Shown: positions 1,821 through 27,702 of the stretch, piece after piece
Layout of the letters: every line of letters starts with the position of its first letter
Position numbering within the stretch: position 1 is the stretch's first letter
IMG/VR virus record: IMGVR_UViG_3300027896_005002
Span: 62,001 to 126,000 of that record
DNA: 64,000 nucleotides
Strand: one strand, 5' to 3'
Program-made: the position numbers and the translations under genes
Notes under the pieces: model-generated
What the model saw: only the letters and a program-made list of their open reading frames with translations
Told to the model about the DNA's origin: nothing
Database searches by the model: none

Positions 1821-1849
1821 CGTAGGTTCAAATCCTACCTGGGACACCA
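1821..1849 (+). pseudogene. orphan tRNA 3' half (T-arm, acceptor 3' strand, CCA)
   Basis: GTAGG-TTCAAAT-CCTAC-CTGGGAC-A-CCA with no complementary 5' half upstream. Confidence 0.65.
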
Positions 1850-1851
1850 TT

Positions 1852-3784: not shown

Positions 3785-4504
3785 CTAAATTTCTATGATA
3801 TCTTCATATAAAATAGTAAAATTATCTATAACAACATTAGCATGGAAATGTCCACAAAAATATTTTTTAAATTGAATTCTATTACAAACTTCATCTAAAA
3901 ATTTTGCAGTAGGATCTAAATATTTACTATAATCATGATCATCCATCTCAATAATGTCAACACCTGAAGCTATCATAAATTTTGCAATCATTCCTTGCGG
4001 TAATGTATGAGCTATTATATAATCTACTTTATTTCCATGTATTTCTAAATTAGTTATTGCATAATCCATTTCTTTATAAGAAGGTATCTCATTCCTCCAA
4101 ATACTTACACCTTCAATTCGACTAGCATCATCAACACTTTTTGCACCGCCCATACAAAAAAATGTTTTACTCTCAATCGTATATATCTCACCACGCTTTA
4201 AATAAAAAATACTATCAGATACTACACCAACTTTACCACCAAATTTTTCAATAATTGGCAACTCTGCTAATCTATCATGATTTTCATGATTACCATCAAT
4301 AAAAAGTATGGTAAATGGTTTTTCATTTAACCATTTTTTCCAATAAATTTCTTCTTTATCTGGTTCGTAAAACCATAACAAACCAAAATCACCGGTAATT
4401 ATCACATAATCATTTTTAGTAAGAGATTTACCTTGAGGAAAATTTGTAGTATTTAATTTCCGAATATCTATCGGAATATGTGTGTCACCAGTTATATAAA
4501 TCAT
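3785..4504 (-). CDS. calcineurin-like metallophosphoesterase
   Basis: GDTH, GDFG, GNHE, AHT, GHFH motifs. Confidence 0.9.
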   Translation of the reverse strand: MIYITGDTHIPIDIRKLNTTNFPQGKSLTKNDYVIITGDFGLLWFYEPDKEEIYWKKWLNEKPFTILFIDGNHENHDRLAELPIIEKFGGKVGVVSDSIFYLKRGEIYTIESKTFFCMGGAKSVDDASRIEGVSIWRNEIPSYKEMDYAITNLEIHGNKVDYIIAHTLPQGMIAKFMIASGVDIIEMDDHDYSKYLDPTAKFLDEVCNRIQFKKYFCGHFHANVVIDNFTILYEDIIEI

Positions 4505-5637: not shown

Positions 5638-5717
5638 TGCCCGTGATTGGAATCGAACCAACATTTTCAGCTTCCTTTACGATTATCTGTTTAGGAAACA
5701 GACTCGGCTACACGGGC
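5638..5717 (-). tRNA. non-canonical tRNA-Arg(CCT), rearranged D region
   Basis: GCCCGTG/CACGGGC, 8-nt linker, TCTGT-TTCCTAA-ACAGA, 23-nt segment starting TAATCGTAA, T-arm GTTGG-TTCGATT-CCAAT. Confidence 0.75.
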
Positions 5718-5720
5718 GCT

Positions 5721-6629
5721 CTAATGTTCTATGTGTGTAATTTGAATATCTTCTTTATTTATTTCAGCTGAATATTCTATTCCACAATTAATACTATTCA
5801 TAGGAATCGGTCTGTCTGCTAATGGATTATGAATAAAAATAAAATCATTTCCTAATATTTTATCAGTTGAGCTAATATTTGCATATGAGTAAATTACTCC
5901 ACTTATATGAGAATATTGTAAATCAAGAAAATAATCTGTCTTAACAGGTTCATTTGATGATTTTTTAAAAATTTTATTACGATTTTCACATGTTTGTCTA
6001 ACAATTTTAGAACTAACTTTATCAATATGAATGACTACATTACCAACTGCTAAAAGAGCGGCTACACATTGCGGCACACCGCCTTCAATATACAATGGTA
6101 TACCATTTAAACCCTCAAGCCATCCACCACTAATGCAAATTATAGTACTTTGCACATTTTTGATTATACCATTTTCAATATCATGCCGAATTTTTTTTGC
6201 TTTTTCAGTAAAACTATTCGTATATCTTAGAATAATTTGGTTTTGCGGGTAATCCATGATACCATTGTAATTCGTTTTTGGAATAGAATCTGGATTGTCT
6301 TTTTTTCCATCTGACATAGTAACTACTTCTATCCAACAATTTAAATTTTCAACAAATAAATCCGGACCTTTATCTGATGGATGAGAAACATTGAATAACA
6401 ATCGCTTTCTAAAAACTGTAGCAAAATAAAGTTCACTATAGCGAGCAGCAAAATCATGTTTCAACTGTGTTTTAAAAGTTTTGTCAACTAAATCATGTGA
6501 TATCTCATACAATTTCTCTACTCGATCACTAAATAACACACATAAATCAGGCGGAAAACCTCCTTGACCTCCTTGAATTTTATTATATAAAGGATCAGTT
6601 GCAGATGGATCTGGATTTAATAATGTCAT
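5721..6629 (-). CDS. hypothetical protein, possible restriction-endonuclease-like fold
   Basis: 302-aa ORF; KGPDLF..NCWIEVVT resembles a PD-(D/E)xK core (weak). Confidence 0.45.
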   Translation of the reverse strand: MTLLNPDPSATDPLYNKIQGGQGGFPPDLCVLFSDRVEKLYEISHDLVDKTFKTQLKHDFAARYSELYFATVFRKRLLFNVSHPSDKGPDLFVENLNCWIEVVTMSDGKKDNPDSIPKTNYNGIMDYPQNQIILRYTNSFTEKAKKIRHDIENGIIKNVQSTIICISGGWLEGLNGIPLYIEGGVPQCVAALLAVGNVVIHIDKVSSKIVRQTCENRNKIFKKSSNEPVKTDYFLDLQYSHISGVIYSYANISSTDKILGNDFIFIHNPLADRPIPMNSINCGIEYSAEINKEDIQITHIEH

Positions 6630-6656
6630 TTTAATCTTTGTATTCTAAAATAAATA

Positions 6657-6739
6657 TGGCGCCCGTGATTCGATTCGAACGAACATTTTCAGCTCCAATT
6701 ACGATTAACTGCTTAGAAGGCAGTCTCGGCTACACGGGC
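6657..6739 (-). tRNA. non-canonical tRNA-Arg(TCT), rearranged D region
   Basis: GCCCGTG/CACGGGC-G-CCA, 8-nt linker, ACTGC-CTTCTAA-GCAGT, TAATCGTAA segment, T-arm GTTCG-TTCGAAT-CGAAT. Confidence 0.78.
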
Positions 6740-6824
6740 TTAATTTCTTAAAATCAAAAAAACTATTGTTATCCTTTTAATCAACTAATAAAACAAAGTT
6801 TTAAATAACATATAATAAAAAAAT

Positions 6825-7616
6825 ATGGGTACTTCACAAGGTAACTTCAAAAGAAAACTTACTGGATTTTATGATAATGAAGATCGAAAAAAACAATGGA
6901 GTCAAGCTAGAATTAATACAAACAAAAATTCGGTCATTCTTAATCATAAAAAAACAATTCAGCAATTAACAAAATTAAAAATTAATGTTCAATGGTTTGA
7001 ACTACAATTGCAACAACATCGTATTACCACAATTACTAAAAATTTAAAATTACTTGACATTAAACATCCAAAACTAGCACTTAAATATTTAAAATCTTTA
7101 TTAGAGCCAAAACGATTAAAAGAAATTGCAAAAGAAAAACGAACATCTAAAACATCTGTCACACTTAAAAATCGATTGAGAACTGATATCATACTGAAAA
7201 AGAAATATATTAAAAATCTAACAAAGAGAAATCATCATAAATATCGATCAAAAGGTGAATTACGTCTCAAACATTGGTTACAAAAAACTTATCCTTACTA
7301 TAATTGGAAAAGTATACATTTAACTTATAACAATTCAATTTATGAATTCGATATCTATTCAGAACAATATGACGATTTTTTCATTGAATATAACGGCGCT
7401 TGTCATTATAAACAAATTCATAGTTTAGAAAACTTTCAGCGTATTCAATGTCGAGATGAACAAAAAATACAAATAATGAAAGAACTTAATAAAGAATTTC
7501 TAATCATCAAGGACAGCATGTCCTTTGAAGAACAAACAAAAACTGTGACAAAATTCTTTAATTTAAGTAGTAATCTTCAAATTAAAAAATTGGAGGTGCG
7601 GGGACACTTTATCTGA
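6825..7616 (+). CDS. free-standing DUF559/Vsr-like (EDxHD-type) putative homing endonuclease
   Basis: Basic N-terminal half, then SKGE..YEFDIY..FIEYNGACHY..RDEQK. Confidence 0.72.
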   Translation: MGTSQGNFKRKLTGFYDNEDRKKQWSQARINTNKNSVILNHKKTIQQLTKLKINVQWFELQLQQHRITTITKNLKLLDIKHPKLALKYLKSLLEPKRLKEIAKEKRTSKTSVTLKNRLRTDIILKKKYIKNLTKRNHHKYRSKGELRLKHWLQKTYPYYNWKSIHLTYNNSIYEFDIYSEQYDDFFIEYNGACHYKQIHSLENFQRIQCRDEQKIQIMKELNKEFLIIKDSMSFEEQTKTVTKFFNLSSNLQIKKLEVRGHFI

Positions 7617-8231
7617 TGTTTTCACACCAGTGTGGACTATCTCTTCATCCAATTGGATGATGGGCGCTAATAAAGGATTATTGATTGAGTTTCTCACCTT
7701 TTAGTCTCTGCACTTTCCAACCTACAAAACACTCTTTCAGTTGGCTTAGCTCAGGATTGCCATATCATTTTACTGATTTAGGGTTCCCTGAATTCACCCA
7801 TTTTCTTCATCAATTGTTACCAATTGAGTCAACCATTTTGATTGAACCCCGGTCCAGAAAGTTTTCCATGACAATTACTACATGTTTATTCTATTCTATC
7901 TTGAATACTCACTCCGTAAATAGACAAGCGTTCAATGAGTACTTCGTAAGTGTCACTTCGGTCCCCTTCTCTTTTACGCGTTCGGTTGTCCTATCCGTAT
8001 ATAAACAGTTCAAGTTGCTACGGCTCCGCTTAAACTTCGACCGCCTTTATTTAGGCAGCCATTGCTGGTGCCTTTGCGCACATTGCAGCGAACTGCAATG
8101 CGAACTGAGCACCGAAAACTGAACCAATTTTGTTGGCAGTTGTTGTTTCATTGGATGATTTAAGAGGCCAACCAATGAGTCCTCTACATGCAATTATCAC
8201 TTCACCCAATCTGTCGAAACCTGACACCCCC
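7591..8231 (-). ncRNA. ssrA: tmRNA split by a T-loop intron (exon1 7841-8231, exon2 7591-7604)
   Basis: 5' GGGGGTGTCAGGTTTCGACAG; acceptor GGGGGTG/CACCTCC with G3-U70; resume context ACAACT-GCC; tag ANKIGSVFGAQFALQFAAMCAKAPAMAA (8051-8137); T-arm CGGGG-TTCAAT|T-CCCCG. Confidence 0.92.
7605..7840 (-). mobile_element. ORF-less group I intron (IC3-like, 236 nt)
   Basis: P1 TCAAT/GTTGA with U-G splice-site pair; core motifs GGCAATCCTGAGC, TGCAGAGACT, AGATAGTCC; terminal G at 7605. Confidence 0.9.
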
Positions 8232-8249
8232 ATAATTTCAAAGAACATT

Positions 8250-8430
8250 AAATCTGGCTGCCGTGCCGCAGCCACCGTTTCATCGAATAGGTACTTACCA
8301 TGGCTATTCGCTATCCTCTACAATGATGCCGAAGCACTAACCACGACACGTCAAGCCAAAGGTATCATATGGTCTCAGCTTGACCGTCCCTGTGACAAGA
8401 GCAAAGGTCGTTAATCATGTCGCCATATGA
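8250..8430 (-). ncRNA. unassigned structured RNA upstream of tmRNA
   Basis: GC-enriched intergenic segment with helices TCATATGG/CCATATGA, CGACAT/GTGTCG, GTCAAGC/GCTTGAC, CGAATAG/CTATTCG, GGCTGC/GCAGCC. Confidence 0.5.
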
Positions 8431-8440
8431 CTTATCAAAT

Positions 8441-8995
8441 TCACATTTTCTCTTTAACAAATATTTTTGCAATGTTATAAGCGTCATCAACACCTCTGTG
8501 ATGACGACCTTCAAGAGGAATATCTAACATTGTTAAAGCTTTATCCATTCCTATAGGTTTTATTTTATGCCTCTCAGCAAATTCATGTTTAAGACTTCTA
8601 CTAATTTTAAATGGTACTTCAATATCATATCTTTTACAATCTTTAGCTAACTGTCGATGATCATAGAAGCCCCAAGAACAAAATATAAAATTACTTAAAC
8701 TTTTCTCTGTTATTAAATAAACATTTTCTCGCCAAATATCCATTACAGTTCTAAAATCTTTTGCAATATCTATGGTAAATTGTTCAATACCGGTCAGTCG
8801 TCTACAAAAATCTGATAACATCGGATTCAATTGTGGTTTAACAAATAAACCTTGTGATAAAATTATGCGATAATCATCAGTAACAATTGAATAACCAATT
8901 TCAATTATTTCATTTTCATTTCGATTTGCTTTTACTCGACCTTCATTAGTATTTCTATCCCAACAAGTTGCTTCAAAATCTACTATTAAATACAT
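8441..8995 (-). CDS. DEDDh 3'-5' exonuclease (ERI-1/KapD-like)
   Basis: VDFEATC, EIIEIG, WGFYD, HHRGVDDA. Confidence 0.9.
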   Translation of the reverse strand: MYLIVDFEATCWDRNTNEGRVKANRNENEIIEIGYSIVTDDYRIILSQGLFVKPQLNPMLSDFCRRLTGIEQFTIDIAKDFRTVMDIWRENVYLITEKSLSNFIFCSWGFYDHRQLAKDCKRYDIEVPFKISRSLKHEFAERHKIKPIGMDKALTMLDIPLEGRHHRGVDDAYNIAKIFVKEKM

Positions 8996-9040: not shown

Positions 9041-9171
9041 TGGTGCGCGACTCCGGGTCTCGAACCCTAAATTTATTTTAAGCGTAAGGCCTTACCCTAT
9101 TGGGAACCACGTCTTTGCTCCTTACAACGGGCTACCTAAAATAAATTGCAGCCATCCTGCTAGAGTCACGC
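9041..9171 (-). ncRNA. 131-nt tRNA-like RNA with encoded CCA and no anticodon loop
   Basis: 9-bp acceptor GCGTGACTC/GAGTCGCGC, D-arm GCAG/CTGC, 12-bp helix ATTTATTTTAGG/CTTAAAATAAAT, T-arm GGG-TTCGAGA-CCC, ACCA end. Confidence 0.7.
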
Positions 9172-9438
9172 ATATCTTCCAGTTATCAGTTGATTTGTTA
9201 TTTTTCGAACAACAAATCCAGTCGATTCACCAAAAACCTTTCGACCAGTAGTTGTTGCAATTTCAAAATCATCAACAATTTTTATCTGACCTTTATGAAA
9301 AATAATATATTTACCATGATTTGCAGAATCCTTGATGATTTCAGACCATTTTTCATCCAGTAATTTTGCATTATCTATAACTTGTTGTTGAATCTTACCT
9401 ATTTTCTTTTTAGGGCCACTAACAAAAACATTTTTCAT
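9166..9438 (-). CDS. hypothetical protein
   Basis: 90-aa ORF coupled to upstream gene; stop overlaps the tRNA-like RNA. Confidence 0.55.
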   Translation of the reverse strand: MKNVFVSGPKKKIGKIQQQVIDNAKLLDEKWSEIIKDSANHGKYIIFHKGQIKIVDDFEIATTTGRKVFGESTGFVVRKITNQLITGRYA

Positions 9439-16088: not shown

Positions 16089-16544
16089 CTATTGTTGCTC
16101 AATTATTTCATCTACCCCTTCATCAAGACTTGGCTCTTCAAACTTTGCAGTCATCTTATCAATTACAGTTTGCCATTGTTCTCTTGATATATTTCTAGAA
16201 TCTAACATTCTATAACCTAAGGGATTTGGCTTTTTACAATATACAAATATTCTTTTATCAAAAGCTTTACAATGCGATAACCAAGCTGCACGATGCTGTT
16301 TATCAATATTAGTTTCATCAATTATCACATTAAATCCATTAACAATAGCCTTTTCAAGACATGTAATCGTCATTTCATGAACAAGAGGTTCTAAATTTTC
16401 AGTGTACAAATAATATCCATTTATCATTTGTCGAAATGAATCTCTATTAACAATTACTATATTTGGCTCTTCTTTAACTTTCATACGAGACCACGTACTC
16501 TTACCTGAGCCTGGAAGCCCAATCATTATATAAACTATTTTCAT
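16089..16544 (-). CDS. P-loop kinase (AAA_33 / T4 PNK kinase-like)
   Basis: GLPGSGKS, VNRDSFR, IIDETN, R..R. Confidence 0.85.
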   Translation of the reverse strand: MKIVYIMIGLPGSGKSTWSRMKVKEEPNIVIVNRDSFRQMINGYYLYTENLEPLVHEMTITCLEKAIVNGFNVIIDETNIDKQHRAAWLSHCKAFDKRIFVYCKKPNPLGYRMLDSRNISREQWQTVIDKMTAKFEEPSLDEGVDEIIEQQ

Positions 16545-18685: not shown

Positions 18686-18769
18686 TGCTCGAGACCGGAA
18701 TCGAACCGGTATGGAATTGCTTCCGAAGGATTTTAAGTCCTTTGCGTCTACCTGCTTCGCCACTCGAGC
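18686..18769 (-). tRNA. tRNA-Leu(TAA)
   Basis: GCTCGAG/CTCGAGC, AAGGA-CTTAAAA-TCCTT, long variable arm. Confidence 0.93.
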
Positions 18770-19263: not shown

Positions 19264-19344
19264 TAGGAGAGGAGGGATTTGAACCCTCATCTGCCACATA
19301 CCGTTACGATTATCCGCCTTATAAGAGCGGCTCGGTACTCTCCT
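19264..19344 (-). tRNA. non-canonical tRNA-Ile(TAT), rearranged D region
   Basis: AGGAGAG/CTCTCCT, 7-nt linker TACCGAG, CCGCT-CTTATAA-GGCGG, ATAATCGTAACGGTA.., T-arm GAGGG-TTCAAAT-CCCTC. Confidence 0.75.
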
Positions 19345-20722: not shown

Positions 20723-21076
20723 TCAAACTTCTATAATTATGTTATTCCATGCACCCGGACAAATCGTAGCTGTCGGCAGCAAACTTGCCATATTCTGAGC
20801 ACCAACAGAATTAAAACTATGTATTATTATATTCTTAGGCTGTCGTCCTGGGTGCGCCTCAAGCCATTGCGCTACCTCATAACCAGTATCTTTCCCAGAT
20901 TTAACATATGTCTGACCGCCCAAGTCGTGATCAAGAAATAGATATTGCCAAGTGCTCTCAATCAAATGTTGTATTGTACTTTTAACTGTTGAAGTTTGTA
21001 CAACTTCATGCCCAATTAATTTTTGTCGAAAAATCTTTTGTCTATCATCATCATCATCTAAAATTAATATTCTCAT
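20723..21076 (-). CDS. receiver-like protein (cyclic-phosphate-processing REC type)
   Basis: ILILDDD, LFLDHDLG, TGYEVAQWL, IIIHSFNSVGAQNM. Confidence 0.75.
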   Translation of the reverse strand: MRILILDDDDDRQKIFRQKLIGHEVVQTSTVKSTIQHLIESTWQYLFLDHDLGGQTYVKSGKDTGYEVAQWLEAHPGRQPKNIIIHSFNSVGAQNMASLLPTATICPGAWNNIIIEV

Positions 21077-21078
21077 TT

Positions 21079-21930
21079 TTATTTCTCAAATTTATAATAA
21101 AAAAACCAACCATTAGCGGATTTTCGTGTACCTTTTAATACTGTTATAATATTTGATGGATAAGTATTTAATTGCTTAGCTGCTTGTTTTTTGTTCGAAA
21201 ATTCTAATTTTTGACCATTTTTTACAGCAAAAAATATTTTTCTCTTAAGTTGTTCAACAAAATCATCATACATTTTTTTAGTTATATACTTAAAAGAAAA
21301 TATCCAATTATTTTTAGATTTAACTTTTCCATGCAAAATACAACTAATAAACCTTTGACTAACCTTAGTATAAATAGATGCTTCGTATTGTGTTTTAAAT
21401 TTCTTTAATTCATTAACATTTCTTGCATAAAAAGCTTTTCCACCATGACACTTACTATGCTTAATTCTTTCTTCAATTTTATTAAACCTTTTATTCTGAG
21501 ATTTACCCTGTTTTTTTCTGGCTTTATCTGACTTAAAATAATTTATTAAACCCAAACTTAAATTTTTTCGTGCTTCTAAATTAAACTTTCCATTACTTCC
21601 GCCTTCTTTTAAATTATATCCAAAAGTTTTATTAGTACTATTAAACTTTTTAATATATTCTTTTTCTTTTTTATCAAGTTCTAATTGTGTATTGCATTTA
21701 CATAATATGTCCCAAGTAAATTTATCAAAACCATATTTCATTAAAGCATTATGAAAATATGATTGATTTTTTGGCTTTTTTATTAAACTTTTCAAACAAA
21801 CTCGATGATGAGCTTTAATTCTACCTTGTAATGATCGCCATGTTTGACCAATATACACTTTATTTGTTAAAATATTTGTAGCTTTATAAATGATACTTTG
21901 TTCATACAAGTATTCATCTAAAATATTCAT
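21079..21930 (-). CDS. GIY-YIG homing endonuclease with NUMOD-type repeats
   Basis: IIYKATN..NKVYIGQT..R; FHNALMKYG; GYNLKEGG; EASI..V / QAAKQL repeats. Confidence 0.88.
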   Translation of the reverse strand: MNILDEYLYEQSIIYKATNILTNKVYIGQTWRSLQGRIKAHHRVCLKSLIKKPKNQSYFHNALMKYGFDKFTWDILCKCNTQLELDKKEKEYIKKFNSTNKTFGYNLKEGGSNGKFNLEARKNLSLGLINYFKSDKARKKQGKSQNKRFNKIEERIKHSKCHGGKAFYARNVNELKKFKTQYEASIYTKVSQRFISCILHGKVKSKNNWIFSFKYITKKMYDDFVEQLKRKIFFAVKNGQKLEFSNKKQAAKQLNTYPSNIITVLKGTRKSANGWFFYYKFEK

Positions 21931-22982
21931 TTACCTGTCTTATCTAAGTATACTGGATCTCGTTGCTTTAAAAATAACCGGCCAAAACCAACAATATATT
22001 TCTCTATCATCGGCTTTATCACTATGCCCTCTCTCAACCTATCGATTAATACACTCTTTCCATTTGAAGCAACTTGGACTGATCGGCCATCTAACCAATC
22101 TTTAAAGATCACATTACTCGCTATAATTGGTACAAATCTCTCTCTCAAACCAATCTTATCCAAGAGAACATCAATCTCTCCAAAATCAATAGCTTTACTA
22201 TTGACTTCAATATCAAAAATCTTTATCGTATGCTTTTTCAAATTATAATAATTACCCTGTACTTTAGGCCCGATTATCTCACCCCGAATCGTAATCGCAC
22301 AATTCGGAAAATAATTGACCTTCAAATTACTCACTGCGTCTATCAAACCATCATTACGAGCGACCTGCCAAAAAGTATGCTCCTCATGATCAGGCAAATT
22401 TATGATAGCATGACCGTGCGTGCACACGCTCATCTTATCATCTACATCAATGAAGACAGCAGCATTAGTGCCTTCTATTTTCTCAGATATGAACACCCTC
22501 TCATTCATCAATTGCTCAACGATATCAGGATGTCTATCGCAGCCTTCAATATCATAATTATAAACCATCTCCGGTCGCTGTACCAAATTACCAGTGCTCG
22601 TCATAACTTCTGGTGCTTCATACTTTGTCACACTCAAAGCAGCTGTTAGATCTACCGGTAAAACGTCCACCTTAAGATAAGCCTTAACACTAGACGCAGA
22701 TGTGACATATCCTTGAGAAATTTCATTTCTTAATTTACAAGTTTTAATTCTATTTTTATCTTTACCTGATAAAAAATTCTGAATATTTTGTTGTAATATA
22801 AATTCCTGAGGCAGTATAGAATCTATTGGAAAATAAACTACACTATCTCCAACTTTATATAAATCTTTTTGGACAACAAATTGATATGTCATCCCTTCAA
22901 CTTGACCAAGTTCCAATTTATCAGCATTTGGATGCGGATAAATTTTAGATATTTTTTTTACTTCCACAGCAAAAGTACTCAT
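21927..22982 (-). CDS. RNA ligase, DRB0094/Rnl2-type with N-terminal OB-like domain
   Basis: HPNADKLEL, YFPIDSILP, EKIEGTN (KxxG), GEIIG..QGN, FDI, REGIV. Confidence 0.9.
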   Translation of the reverse strand: MSTFAVEVKKISKIYPHPNADKLELGQVEGMTYQFVVQKDLYKVGDSVVYFPIDSILPQEFILQQNIQNFLSGKDKNRIKTCKLRNEISQGYVTSASSVKAYLKVDVLPVDLTAALSVTKYEAPEVMTSTGNLVQRPEMVYNYDIEGCDRHPDIVEQLMNERVFISEKIEGTNAAVFIDVDDKMSVCTHGHAIINLPDHEEHTFWQVARNDGLIDAVSNLKVNYFPNCAITIRGEIIGPKVQGNYYNLKKHTIKIFDIEVNSKAIDFGEIDVLLDKIGLRERFVPIIASNVIFKDWLDGRSVQVASNGKSVLIDRLREGIVIKPMIEKYIVGFGRLFLKQRDPVYLDKTGK

Positions 22983-25298: not shown

Positions 25299-25377
25299 CA
25301 GGAGCGAAGAGACTCGAACTCTCATTTTCAACCAAATTACAAGTATATGGTTTTGGAGACCACACTGTTACGCTCCT
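25299..25377 (-). tRNA. non-canonical tRNA-Trp(CCA), rearranged D region
   Basis: AGGAGCG/CGCTCCT-G, 7-nt linker, GTGGT-CTCCAAA-ACCAT, ATACTTGTAATTTGGTTGAAAAT, T-arm GAGAG-TTCGAGT-CTCTT. Confidence 0.72.
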
Positions 25378-27436: not shown

Positions 27437-27507
27437 AAAATCCTCCTTTTTAATAGGAAGATTTATAAACAGAATAGAAATTCGCATGTCTACCAAATAT
27501 AATAAAT

Positions 27508-27581
27508 TGCGCGCGATGAGATTCGAACTCATACCTGCTGATTTCTAAGACCAGTGCATCTACCAATTGTGCAACGCGCGC
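27508..27581 (-). tRNA. tRNA-Leu(TAG) with short variable loop
   Basis: GCGCGCG/CGCGCGC, CTGGT-CTTAGAA-ATCAG, 5-nt variable loop. Confidence 0.85.
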
Positions 27582-27592
27582 ATAAAATTAAA

Positions 27593-27667
27593 TGGGAATG
27601 ATAGGATTCGAACCTACAAACATCTAAATTTTGAATTTAGCGACTCTACCAATTGGTCTACATTCCC
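27593..27667 (-). tRNA. tRNA-Leu(CAA) with short variable loop
   Basis: GGGAATG/CATTCCC, CTAAA-TTCAAAA-TTTAG, 6-nt variable loop. Confidence 0.85.
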
Positions 27668-27702
27668 AAAAATTGTCTTTATTGAATGTTCTTAATAACT
27701 TC

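What the first reader, a model, noticed from the sequence alone, without database searches (positions are those of the whole stretch)
9041..9171. 131-nt CCA-ending tRNA mimic with a long rod instead of an anticodon arm
Seen: a 9-bp acceptor stem, U8-A9, a 4-bp D-stem, a 3-bp T-stem with loop TTCGAGA, and an encoded ACCA. The anticodon position holds a 12-bp helix extended by about 52 nt that folds further (GTAAGG/CCTTAC or GGAGC/GTTCC), with no 7-nt U-turn loop. Known: a 9/3 acceptor branch is the allo-tRNA geometry, and a tRNA-like domain plus long helix is the tmRNA TLD layout. It lacks G3-U70 and any tag ORF. Inference: a non-decoding tRNA mimic, such as a decoy for tRNA-sensing defences, a ribosome-rescue RNA or an amino-acid donor.
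Basis: partly seen in the sequence, partly recalled or inferred. Interest (0 to 1): 0.85.

Follow-up and report, generated by a model that had tools for sequence, protein, structure and literature searches.

The report
Orphan tRNA-shaped RNA with long rod
A 416-kb phage carries a 131-base gene for an RNA whose upper half is a textbook CCA-ending tRNA but whose anticodon arm is replaced by a long hairpin, so it cannot read codons; the shape is real, but it occurs in one phage lineage only, as a recent insertion, and its job is unknown.

Summary
On the minus strand of 9041-9171 lies a 131-nt RNA with a 9-bp (10 with U.G) acceptor stem, a UA linker, a D hairpin (GCAG/GAUGG/CUGC), a 3-bp T stem with loop UUCGAGA and an encoded ACCA. 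A 14-bp rod capped by an irregular 50-nt hairpin replaces the anticodon arm. ARAGORN and Rfam do not call it.

My structural descriptor hit nothing else in 1.57 Mb. No homologue was found beyond one near-identical allele. Its three changes all preserve structure, but that is expected by chance with P=0.14.

A relative with 83% identical neighbouring genes lacks the RNA. There the upstream ORF runs on, so the RNA is a recent insertion into that ORF's 3' end and now supplies its stop codon.

Removing the insert in silico does not give a recognisable tRNA. There is no group I core, no BHB motif, no G3:U70 and no tmRNA signal.

Best reading (about 0.4): a tRNA-processed, non-decoding, tRNA-scaffolded stable RNA, like T4 RNAC, acting through its acceptor/elbow half or its displayed hairpin. 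Main rival (about 0.3): a functionless relic of tRNA-island recombination. Function is untested and interest is moderate.

The parts
9041..9171 (-). Whole 131-nt tRNA-shaped RNA gene. The 5' G1 is at 9171 and the 3' A of ACCA is at 9041.
   Evidence: The CM built from it finds identical or near-identical copies in L100 and L022/L056.
9163..9171 (-). Acceptor stem 5' strand (RNA 1-9, GCGUGACUC). RNA 4-6 (UGA, 9166-9168) is also the stop codon of the upstream ORF 9166-9438.
   Evidence: Pair probability 1.0; ORF coordinates.
9045..9053 (-). Acceptor stem 3' strand (RNA 119-127, GAGUCGCGC). G118 (9054) can add a U10.G118 pair.
   Evidence: The allele in L022 changes G124 to A, turning U4.G into U4-A.
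9041..9044 (-). Discriminator A73-equivalent plus encoded CCA (RNA 128-131).
   Evidence: About half of this phage's tRNA genes also encode CCA.
9148..9160 (-). D hairpin (RNA 12-24): stem GCAG/CUGC, 5-nt loop GAUGG carrying the GG expected to meet the T loop.
   Evidence: Pair probability 0.99-1.0.
9134..9147 (-). Rod, 5' strand (RNA 25-38, AAUUUAUUUUAGGU).
   Evidence: 14 consecutive pairs with RNA 89-102, probability 0.74-1.0.
9070..9083 (-). Rod, 3' strand (RNA 89-102, GCUUAAAAUAAAUU). It contains CUUAAAA, identical to the anticodon loop of tRNA-Leu(UAA).
   Evidence: Compare the window's tRNA-Leu(taa) and the T4 tRNA-Leu gene at L104:4371-4457, located. The T4 anticodon-loop sequence itself is quoted from memory.
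9084..9133 (-). 50-nt interior of the rod (RNA 39-88): irregular hairpin 40-47/70-78, bulge UAA, apical stem GGAGC/GUUCC, 9-nt loop AAAGACGUG, and a 10-nt unpaired stretch AAGGCCUUAC.
   Evidence: Apical stem probability is about 0.7. The fold of this part alone is not better than shuffles (z = -0.38).
9118..9124 (-). Shine-Dalgarno-like UAAGGAG (RNA 48-54). It lies 7 nt before GUG (RNA 62-64, 9108-9110), which opens a 10-codon frame ending at UAA (RNA 92-94).
   Evidence: Read from the sequence. GUG is GCG in the second allele. About half of the phage genes have similar SD motifs.
9084..9095 (-). Perfect 12-nt palindrome GUAAGGCCUUAC (RNA 77-88).
   Evidence: (I21).
9055..9067 (-). T arm (RNA 105-117): 3-bp stem GGG/CCC, 7-nt loop UUCGAGA (UUCGAGU in the second allele).
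9166..9438 (-). Upstream ORF (90 aa, no family). Its original C-terminus was replaced when the RNA gene was inserted.
8441..8995 (-). Downstream DEDDh 3'-5' exonuclease (RNase_T family, KapD/ERI-1-like), 45 nt after the ACCA. It is a neighbour, not shown to be a partner.
   Evidence: Pfam 3e-14. The pairing of this gene with tmRNA is kept in relatives that lack the RNA.

Best explanation
It is a tRNA-scaffolded, non-decoding stable RNA.

Processing (inferred): it is transcribed with the leftward operon DUF3307 - orf90 - RNA - exonuclease - tmRNA and cut out like the neighbouring tRNAs. RNase P would cut 5' of G1, and 3' trimming would stop at the encoded CCA.

Shape (shown as sequence and predicted fold only): the product keeps the tRNA acceptor/T limb (9+3 bp) and the D-loop/T-loop elbow. 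The other limb is a hairpin of roughly 31 stacked pairs, about three times the normal length and with no anticodon loop. It therefore cannot sit in the ribosomal decoding site.

Likely action (inferred): it would be seen only by factors that read the upper half of a tRNA. These are RNase P, CCA-adding and 3'-trimming enzymes, a synthetase that ignores the anticodon (the end G1-C72, C2-G71, G3-C70, A73 is Leu-like), or toxins and nucleases that attack tRNA ends. I think it most likely acts off the ribosome, either as a competitor or decoy for such factors or as a stable carrier that displays the 50-nt hairpin.

Side effect that follows from the coordinates: excision removes the stop codon of orf90, leaving a non-stop message.
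For: Structure:
- All tRNA upper-half features are intact and correctly spaced, with high pair probabilities.
- The T loop has U54 U55 C56 and A58, closed by G53-C61. GG is in the D loop. CCA is encoded, as in about half of the phage's own tRNA genes.
- The descriptor has no false hit in 1.57 Mb.
- The rod is strongly favoured over any anticodon-stem reading.

Setting:
- Same strand as, and embedded in, an island of at least 27 tRNA genes. The island also holds a tmRNA, PTH2, a 3'-5' exonuclease and RNA-repair genes: AAA_33 kinase, Metallophos, cREC_REC and RNA ligase.
- This setting fits conflict over tRNAs.

Variation:
- The three differences between the two alleles fall in the apical loop, at T-loop position 60, and turn U.G into U-A.

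Precedent:
- T4 RNAC, a stable RNA in the T4 tRNA cluster, has a T arm, a closing stem and long hairpins, and its role is still unknown (PMC3014915; PMC9697503).
- It was the best hit of my model in the T4 tRNA region (18.3 bits).
Against: - No expression data.
- There are only two alleles, so no covariation can be measured. Three neutral changes are expected by chance with P = 0.14.
- The substitution density in the RNA (3/131) is not lower than in the flanking gene (7/555).
- The RNA is absent from the closest relative outside the lineage and from more distant relatives that keep the exonuclease-tmRNA pair. It is therefore dispensable for the clade.
- No homologue was found in IMG/VR, JGI metagenomes, GTDB genomes or GenBank phages with the patterns and model used.
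- The fold of the interior alone is no better than shuffles.
- Which factor it would bind is pure inference.
Confidence: 0.4

Rival explanations
1. Functionless relic. The gene is a by-product of recombination in a tRNA island rich in homing endonucleases. A tRNA gene had its anticodon arm replaced or expanded by a palindromic segment, and was then copied into the 3' end of orf90. It is too young to have decayed.
For: - It is a lineage-specific insertion that truncates an ORF.
- It is an orphan with no homologues.
- Its substitution density is no lower than its neighbours'.
- The same window holds an orphan tRNA 3' half at 1822-1851 with no 5' partner.
- The window holds many HNH, GIY-YIG and DUF559 endonuclease genes.
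- The island is mosaic between near-identical genomes.
Against: - Every helix is perfect: 9-10 bp acceptor, 4 bp D stem, 14 bp rod.
- All elbow and CCA signals are intact.
- All three allele differences spare the structure.
- The insertion kept a usable stop codon for orf90.
Confidence: 0.3
2. Intron-containing decoding tRNA. A 59-nt intervening sequence (RNA 31-89, or a shifted register) is removed. This leaves the stem AUUUA/UAAAU and a loop CUUAAAA (anticodon UAA, Leu) or UUUUAAA (anticodon UUA, ochre). Cutting and rejoining would be done by proteins such as RNase III or another nuclease plus the phage kinase, phosphatase and ligase.
For: - CUUAAAA is exactly the tRNA-Leu(UAA) anticodon loop and is followed by a strand that pairs with RNA 26-30. 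The T4 tRNA-Leu loop, quoted from memory, is the same.
- The acceptor end GCG...CGC-A73 is Leu-like.
- 9/3 allo-tRNAs are reported with Arg, Leu and ochre anticodons (PMC7609411).
- An RNA ligase, a kinase and phosphoesterases are encoded nearby.
- ARAGORN in intron mode does return a tRNA.
Against: - There is no group I core: 59 nt, and no Intron_gpI hit at E<=10.
- There is no bulge-helix-bulge. The rod has no bulges, and the bulges in the interior have the wrong polarity.
- No splicing endonuclease was seen among the ORFs scanned against Pfam: 47 proteins, mainly from 1-45.5 kb of the window.
- ARAGORN's reading is 26 kcal/mol worse than the rod, with about zero probability.
- None of four in-silico spliced forms is called a tRNA.
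- It has no long variable arm, which tRNA-Leu requires.
- The phage already has tRNA-Leu(UAA).
- The standard code fits the window, so no ochre suppressor is needed.
- CUUAAAA in an AT-rich helix is a roughly 4% coincidence (my estimate).
Confidence: 0.07
3. Cis-acting punctuation or regulator. The tRNA shape serves only as an RNase P / 3'-end processing site. It separates the orf90 and exonuclease messages and makes orf90 mRNA non-stop, so its product is tagged by the phage tmRNA or its level is lowered.
For: - The stop codon of orf90 is RNA positions 4-6.
- There is no terminator or convincing promoter between orf90, the RNA and the exonuclease gene.
- A phage tmRNA lies 800 nt downstream.
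Against: - A minimal acceptor/T hairpin would be enough for RNase P. The D arm, the elbow signals and a 78-nt rod are not needed.
- Relatives manage the same operon without it.
Confidence: 0.1
4. Miniature tmRNA-like rescue RNA. The tRNA-like domain plus rod would correspond to the TLD plus helix 2. The frame (G[U/C]G) GUU CCC AAU AGG GUA AGG CCU UAC GCU UAA would be a tag.
For: - The one interior difference between the alleles turns GUG into GCG. That destroys a start codon but gives an Ala 'resume-like' codon.
- The -6 to -1 sequence AAAGAC recalls E. coli AUAGUC (from memory only).
Against: - No G3:U70.
- A true D stem-loop is present where tmRNA has none.
- No pseudoknot.
- The rod stacks on the D stem in the anticodon direction, where SmpB must sit.
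- No Rfam tmRNA hit at E<=10 and no ARAGORN tmRNA call.
- A canonical tmRNA is already present.
- No SmpB was seen among the ORFs scanned against Pfam (47 proteins, mainly from 1-45.5 kb).
- A 10-codon frame in 131 nt is expected by chance.
Confidence: 0.02

Closest known systems
Bacteriophage T4 RNAC (species 1 RNA, rnaC; AF158101 70908-71046)
   Same: - A small stable RNA encoded inside a phage tRNA gene cluster.
- A canonical T arm (CCGGG/UUCGAAU/CCCGG).
- The 5' and 3' ends close a stem next to the T arm.
- Long hairpins stand where the D and anticodon arms should be, including a 10-bp arm with a 6-nt loop.
- No anticodon loop.
- Function still unknown (PMC3014915; PMC9697503).
- It was the best hit of my single-sequence model in the T4 tRNA region (18.3 bits), and it gives a weak tRNA-Sec-like Rfam signal.
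   Different: - No sequence homology is shown. The score reflects shared tRNA-likeness.
- RNAC has two long hairpins, no D hairpin with GG, an 8/5 rather than a 9/3 branch in its tRNA-like reading, and no encoded CCA.
Allo-tRNAs with a 9/3 acceptor branch (Mukai et al. 2017, PMC5389517)
   Same: - A 12-bp acceptor/T branch split 9/3.
- A compact D loop.
- Some members are proposed to be non-translating regulatory RNAs.
- Some overlap ORFs of mobile or toxin-antitoxin genes.
   Different: - Allo-tRNAs have a normal (even longer) anticodon arm with a 7-nt loop and also a long V arm. This RNA has a single arm between the D and T arms and no anticodon loop.
- Most allo-tRNAs have G73 or U73. This RNA has A73.
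- Their D arm is a long stem with a tetraloop. Here it is 4 bp with a pentaloop.
tRNA-like domain plus helix 2 of tmRNA
   Same: A CCA-ending acceptor/T limb joined to a long helix, with no anticodon.
   Different: - No G3:U70.
- A real D stem-loop is present.
- No pseudoknots.
- No credible tag frame.
- Not detected by the Rfam or ARAGORN tmRNA models.
Non-decoding chargeable tRNA-like RNAs, e.g. Bacillus cereus tRNA-Other (cited in PMC5389517)
   Same: A tRNA-shaped small RNA that is not used by the ribosome.
   Different: tRNA-Other keeps a cloverleaf of normal size. Charging of the present RNA is untested.
Engineered 'tRNA scaffold' RNAs and aptamer-tagged allo-tRNAs (Ponchon & Dardel 2007, from memory; PMC7590224)
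   Same: The architecture is the same as the laboratory trick. The anticodon stem is extended and a foreign hairpin replaces the loop, so that cellular tRNA enzymes process and stabilise the RNA.
   Different: Those RNAs are man-made. No natural phage example with a defined cargo is known to me.
Bacterial Y-RNA-like YrlA
   Same: A tRNA-like elbow module fused to a long helix.
   Different: YrlA is the circular permutation. Its ends lie in the long helix and its acceptor-like stem is capped. There is no Rfam hit, and no Ro/Rsr gene was seen among the ORFs scanned against Pfam.

Membership tests
Canonical tRNA (Rfam RF00005 / ARAGORN) | Cloverleaf with a 7/5 acceptor/T branch, detected by the standard models. 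| tested here: not met
   No RF00005 hit at gathering score or at E<=10. No ARAGORN call in default mode. The branch is 9/3.
Canonical tRNA (Rfam RF00005 / ARAGORN) | 5-bp anticodon stem closed by a 7-nt loop with U33 and purine 37. | tested here: not met
   A 14-bp rod plus a 50-nt interior stands in that place, and the loops are 9 nt or irregular.
Canonical tRNA (Rfam RF00005 / ARAGORN) | Elbow signals: T loop U54 U55 C56 A58 with G53-C61, and GG in the D loop. Also the U8-equivalent and a 3' CCA. | tested here: met
   UUCGAGA closed by G107-C115; D loop GAUGG; U10 A11; ACCA.
Allo-tRNA (9/3) | 12-bp acceptor branch split 9/3. | tested here: met
   9 bp plus 3 bp, with probabilities about 1.0. 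An extra U10.G118 pair would make it 10/3.
Allo-tRNA (9/3) | Long V arm in addition to an anticodon arm. | tested here: not met
   Only one arm lies between the D and T arms. Just 2 nt (UA) separate the rod from the T stem. The definition is taken from PMC5389517.
Allo-tRNA (9/3) | Discriminator G73 or U73 (Ser identity) in most members. | tested here: not met
   The discriminator is A.
tmRNA | G3:U70 wobble pair in the acceptor stem. | tested here: not met
   G3 pairs with C125. The only wobble, U4.G124, becomes U-A in the second allele.
tmRNA | Recognised by tmRNA models; tag reading frame with pseudoknots. | tested here: not met
   No RF00023 hit at E<=10. ARAGORN -m found nothing even at a relaxed threshold.
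tRNA with a group I intron | Catalytic core P3-P9 (about 200 nt or more) inside the anticodon loop. | tested here: not met
   The insert is 50-59 nt, and there is no RF00028 hit at E<=10. The same scan finds a true group I intron at 7613-7854.
tRNA with an archaeal/eukaryal-type intron | Bulge-helix-bulge motif at the splice sites, plus a splicing endonuclease. | tested here: not met
   The rod has no bulges. The interior bulges (UAA on the 5' strand, A74 on the 3' strand) flank a 4-bp helix in the opposite polarity to BHB (structure). No endonuclease of that family appeared in the Pfam scans, which covered 47 ORFs, mainly from 1-45.5 kb.
T4 RNAC-like stable RNAs | Sequence or profile homology to T4 rnaC. 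| tested here: inconclusive
   My model scores rnaC at 18.3 bits, E = 6e-4 in 8 kb. The aligned parts are the generic acceptor and T arm. Rfam has no RNAC family.
T4 RNAC-like stable RNAs | A stable processed RNA that accumulates during infection. | not testable with these tools
   No expression data exist for this uncultured phage.
Aminoacylatable tRNA-like RNA (Leu-type) | Charged by a synthetase that ignores the anticodon (A73, intact elbow). | not testable with these tools
   A73 and G1-C72/C2-G71/G3-C70 are present. That LeuRS does not depend on the anticodon is from my own knowledge.

The most novel reading that the evidence does not exclude
The phage makes a natural 'tRNA scaffold'. This would be an anticodon-less, CCA-ending and possibly leucylated tRNA body that tRNA enzymes mature. 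It would work off the ribosome in one of two ways. It could be a decoy that soaks up host defence factors aimed at tRNA acceptor ends or elbows. Or it could be a stable carrier presenting the 50-nt hairpin, with its SD-like UAAGGAG and 8-nt self-complementary loop, to a host target.
Probability: 0.15. Interest if true: 0.8.

Novelty: new variant of a known kind. Interest (0 to 1): 0.5.

Why it matters
Phages are now known to use their own tRNAs to survive host nucleases that destroy tRNAs. An RNA that keeps only the half of a tRNA read by processing enzymes, synthetases and many toxins would be a new kind of player in that conflict. It would also be a natural counterpart of the laboratory tRNA scaffold.

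It could give a handle on a 50-year-old puzzle: what the tRNA-like stable RNAs of T4 (RNAC and RNAD) are for.

If it is instead a young relic, it documents how tRNA-gene fragments are shuffled into coding genes in huge-phage tRNA islands.

Tried and rejected
Homologue searches that found only this lineage:
- blastn against GenBank phages.
- Exact or degenerate patterns in IMG/VR: the T arm plus acceptor, T arm + 13 nt + ACCA, and the apical hairpin.
- A D-loop-plus-T-arm pattern in JGI metagenomes, followed by the CM.
- T arm + ACCA in GTDB genomes. The hits were allo-tRNA-like genes of Acidobacteria, att-site fragments and chance matches.
- CM R1 on 19 loci encoding exonuclease relatives, on the rest of the same contig and on T4.
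- Exact-protein look-ups of both neighbours.
- blastn-short of the 5' part, the 3' part and the interior against 720 kb of fetched loci.
- A repeat of the insert inside the window: none.

Readings rejected:
- MITE inserted into a tRNA. Removing the 78-nt palindromic unit leaves a 53-nt body with no anticodon arm, and no second copy exists.
- ARAGORN's tRNA-Leu(UAG) with a 33-nt intron, on energy grounds.
- Stop-codon recoding, and hence a need for a suppressor.
- tRNA-Sec. There is no UCA, no V arm and no RF01852 hit.

Not pursued: CsrA-type GGA motifs and an anti-SD sponge reading, which I noted but could not test. Reading orf90 through its TGA into the RNA meets further stops at once.
Full report
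WHAT IS THERE

The window is part of a 416,029-bp IMG/VR contig (UViG_3300027896_005002 = Ga0209777_10000009). It has about 31% G+C and uses the standard genetic code.

The finding lies on the minus strand. RNA position p equals window coordinate 9172-p. Read 5' to 3', the 131 nt are:
- GCGUGACUC (acceptor, 5' strand)
- UA (linker)
- GCAG-GAUGG-CUGC (D hairpin)
- AAUUUAUUUUAGGU (rod, 5' strand)
- 50 nt (interior)
- GCUUAAAAUAAAUU (rod, 3' strand)
- UA
- GGG-UUCGAGA-CCC (T arm)
- G
- GAGUCGCGC (acceptor, 3' strand)
- ACCA

ViennaRNA gives -48.6 kcal/mol against -34.8 +/- 3.7 for dinucleotide shuffles (z = -3.76). Pair probabilities are about 1.0 for the acceptor, D and T stems and 0.74-1.0 for all 14 rod pairs.

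The interior most likely continues the rod as an irregular hairpin:
- helix 40-47/70-78 with A74 bulged;
- a UAA bulge;
- apical stem GGAGC/GUUCC;
- a 9-nt loop AAAGACGUG;
- a 10-nt unpaired stretch AAGGCCUUAC.

That part alone is not better than shuffled sequence (z = -0.38).

IS IT MORE THAN CHANCE?

ARAGORN and Rfam do not report it, at gathering score or at E<=10. Three results show it is not chance.
- The T-loop motif GGTTCRANNCC occurs 19 times in the window against 0.28 expected. Every occurrence is in a tRNA-like gene, and one of them is this RNA.
- I wrote a descriptor that requires a T loop closed by G-C, a fully paired 12- or 13-bp acceptor/T branch, a D hairpin with GG, a rod of at least 9 bp between the D and T arms, and a length of 100-260 nt.
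- That descriptor hit only copies of this RNA in 784,374 bases searched on both strands.

CONTEXT

The gene sits between a 90-aa ORF (9166-9438) and a DEDDh 3'-5' exonuclease of the RNase_T family (8441-8995; Pfam 3e-14). All are on the minus strand.

The ORF's stop codon, UGA, is RNA positions 4-6. No terminator or convincing promoter separates the three genes.

Further downstream is a tmRNA (7839-8224) interrupted by a group I intron (7613-7854).

The surrounding 30 kb is a tRNA island:
- 22 ARAGORN tRNAs and 5 more Rfam tRNA hits;
- PTH2, radical-SAM enzymes and a Metallophos phosphoesterase;
- an AAA_33 kinase, a cREC_REC domain protein and an RNA ligase;
- many HNH, GIY-YIG and DUF559 endonuclease genes.

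The Pfam scans covered 47 ORFs, mainly from 1-45.5 kb of the window. Among them there was no synthetase, SmpB, Ro/Rsr, reverse transcriptase or splicing endonuclease.

RELATIVES

Every search found only this lineage.

Exact look-up of the neighbouring proteins gave three further contigs.
- L100 (JGI 3300003852) carries an identical RNA.
- L022 = L056 = L101 (JGI 3300027902) carries an allele with three changes:
  - U63C, in the apical loop;
  - A114U, at T-loop position 60;
  - G124A, which turns U4.G into U4-A.

All three changes spare the structure. A simple model gives P = 0.14 for that by chance. The substitution density in the RNA (3/131) is not lower than in the adjacent exonuclease gene (7/555). 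So there is no statistical evidence for or against constraint.

The next relative, L023, has an exonuclease 83% identical and an orf90 54% identical. There the two genes are only 30 nt apart, with no RNA between them. Its orf90 continues for about 15 more codons. This C-terminal extension resembles that of a third homologue, P0056. The last bases before the exonuclease gene are recognisably homologous in both phages.

The RNA gene is therefore a derived insertion of about 150 nt into the 3' end of orf90.

More distant relatives keep the exonuclease-tmRNA(+intron) pair without the RNA (L025).

These searches gave no further member:
- pattern scans of IMG/VR, JGI metagenomes and GTDB genomes;
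- blastn of GenBank phages;
- searches with covariance model R1.

CAN IT BECOME AN ORDINARY tRNA?

The 3' strand of the rod contains CUUAAAA followed by UAAAU. That is the tRNA-Leu(UAA) anticodon loop plus a strand that pairs with RNA 26-30. Removing RNA 31-89 would therefore leave a formally correct anticodon arm. Other registers give the ochre anticodon UUA.

9/3 allo-tRNAs are reported with Arg, Leu and ochre anticodons (PMC7609411).

ARAGORN in intron mode proposes a different solution: tRNA-Leu(UAG) with a 33-nt intron and a long variable region.

Against all of these readings:
- the insert is far too small for a group I intron and gives no RF00028 signal;
- there is no bulge-helix-bulge motif;
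- ARAGORN's solution is 26 kcal/mol worse than the rod, with essentially zero probability;
- none of four in-silico spliced forms is recognised as a tRNA;
- a Leu tRNA needs a long variable arm, which is absent;
- the phage already has tRNA-Leu(UAA);
- nothing suggests ochre recoding.

I give splicing about 0.07.

tmRNA-LIKE?

The interior holds UAAGGAG, then 7 nt, then GUG, which opens a 10-codon frame. In the second allele GUG is GCG. That kills a start codon but would suit a tmRNA resume codon.

This is the only point in favour. Against it:
- there is no G3:U70;
- the RNA has a true D stem-loop;
- the rod stacks on the D stem where SmpB would have to bind;
- neither Rfam nor ARAGORN sees a tmRNA;
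- a canonical tmRNA is already encoded next door.

I give this about 0.02.

WHAT IT MOST LIKELY IS

The upper half is a complete tRNA mimic. It has the acceptor stem, CCA, discriminator A, T loop with G53-C61, GG in the D loop and a U8-like linker.

The lower limb is D stem 4 bp + rod 14 bp + about 13 more pairs. That is roughly three times the normal length (inference from the predicted secondary structure).

Such an RNA should be matured by RNase P and by 3' trimming to the encoded CCA, like its neighbours. It should be visible to factors that read only the acceptor/elbow half, but it cannot decode.

Its end (GCG...CGC-A73) resembles tRNA-Leu. T4 tRNA-Leu was the second-best hit of my model in the T4 tRNA region. 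LeuRS, SerRS and AlaRS do not need the anticodon (own knowledge). Charging is therefore conceivable but untested.

The architecture is that of the laboratory 'tRNA scaffold'.

The closest natural precedent is T4 RNAC.
- It is a 139-nt stable RNA in the T4 tRNA cluster.
- It has a canonical T arm, a closing stem and long hairpins instead of D and anticodon arms.
- It has no known function (PMC3014915; PMC9697503).
- It has no Rfam family.
- My model scores it at 18.3 bits, but only through generic tRNA features.

I therefore favour, at about 0.4, a processed, non-decoding, tRNA-scaffolded RNA that acts off the ribosome. It would be a competitor or decoy for factors that read tRNA ends or elbows, or a carrier for its hairpin. 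This fits a gene neighbourhood devoted to tRNA supply and RNA repair.

One consequence follows from the coordinates alone. Excision removes orf90's stop codon and creates a non-stop mRNA.

The main rival, at about 0.3, is a young, functionless product of recombination. This island demonstrably shuffles tRNA pieces: there is an orphan tRNA 3' half at 1822-1851 and mosaic differences between near-identical genomes.

A purely cis-acting processing signal gets about 0.1.

COMPARISON AND NOVELTY

- It is not a member of the allo-tRNAs. The 9/3 branch is met, but the long V arm, the anticodon arm and G73/U73 are not (PMC5389517).
- It is not a tmRNA, a tRNA-Sec or an intron-bearing tRNA.
- It works like, and may be an analogue of, T4 RNAC and other non-decoding tRNA-like RNAs, such as B. 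cereus tRNA-Other (cited).

I rate it a new variant of a known kind, with moderate interest (0.5). The shape is striking and real. Weighing against it are the lack of conservation, its recent origin by insertion and the absence of expression data.

Noticed in passing
window 5638-5717(-), 6660-6739(-), 19264-19344(-), 25299-25377(-); IMG/VR loci L105-L143: A family of decoding tRNAs with an unusual topology. Anticodons are Arg CCU, UCU, ACG and UCG and Ile UAU, plus a Trp CCA variant.

Layout: 7-bp acceptor, UA, (G/A)CCGAG, then the anticodon hairpin directly, then the conserved UAAUCGUAA, then NNGGAG(C/U)UGAAAAUG, then a normal T arm. There is no D hairpin. Rfam aligns them with the D arm deleted and a 20-nt variable-region insertion. 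ARAGORN misses them. The copy at 6660-6739 is also below Rfam's gathering score.

An exact-pattern scan of IMG/VR gave 39 stretches and 31 distinct genes. In the 28-sequence alignment A4, position 10 pairs with a base lying AFTER the anticodon arm: G-C in 18, A-U in 8, unpaired in none. The anticodon arm therefore seems to be nested inside the D stem, with a GG-bearing bulge in the role of the D loop.

I found no description of this in the paper library. It may deserve its own study.
   Followed up: partly
window 7613-8224(-); L025:6682-7292; L022:4146-4551: The phage tmRNA is interrupted near its 3' end by a group I intron in the window and in a distant 335-kb relative. The near-identical genome L022/L056 has an intact, intron-less tmRNA with tag ANKIGSVFGAQFALQFAAMCAKAPAMAA. 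The intron is therefore mobile within the species. The region 5717-7841 is replaced between the two genomes.
   Followed up: partly
window 1822-1851(+): An orphan tRNA 3' half: T arm GUAGG/UUCAAAU/CCUAC, then CUGGGAC, then ACCA. No complementary 5' strand exists anywhere in the window. It lies between ORF 1261-1803 and the start of the radical-SAM gene.
   Followed up: partly
window 27507-27582(-) and 27592-27668(-): Two tRNAs with Leu anticodons (UAG, CAA) are of class I length (about 76 nt) and lack the long variable arm that bacterial tRNA-Leu normally has. The tRNA-Leu(UAA) at 18686-18769 does have it. Their amino-acid identity is unclear.
   Followed up: no
window 8225-8440(-): A spacer of about 210 nt, relatively G+C-rich, lies between the exonuclease gene and the tmRNA. 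It is conserved in L022 (one indel). The corresponding spacer is only about 70 nt in L025. There is no Rfam hit, and its folds are not better than shuffles. Unexplained.
   Followed up: partly
L027:8720-8840, L028:1355-1470, L029:3930-4050: A different conserved RNA of about 105 nt lies directly after tRNA arrays in three other large phage contigs. A closing helix (A/G)GGAUG / CAUC(C/U)(C/U) and an internal hairpin CUCGC/GCGAG <-> CUCCA/UGGAG both covary. It holds a T-loop-like hairpin GGGUUCGAGUCCC and an internal GGCACCA. There is no Rfam family.
   Followed up: partly
window 3785-4504, 16089-16544, 20723-21076, 21927-22982 (all -); L099: A set of RNA-repair genes is interleaved with the tRNA genes: Metallophos phosphoesterase, AAA_33/KTI12-like kinase, cREC_REC (cyclic-phosphate processing receiver domain) and an RNA ligase with a PHA02142 OB fold. 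A second RNA ligase paralogue, 68% identical, lies about 57 kb further along the contig.
   Followed up: no
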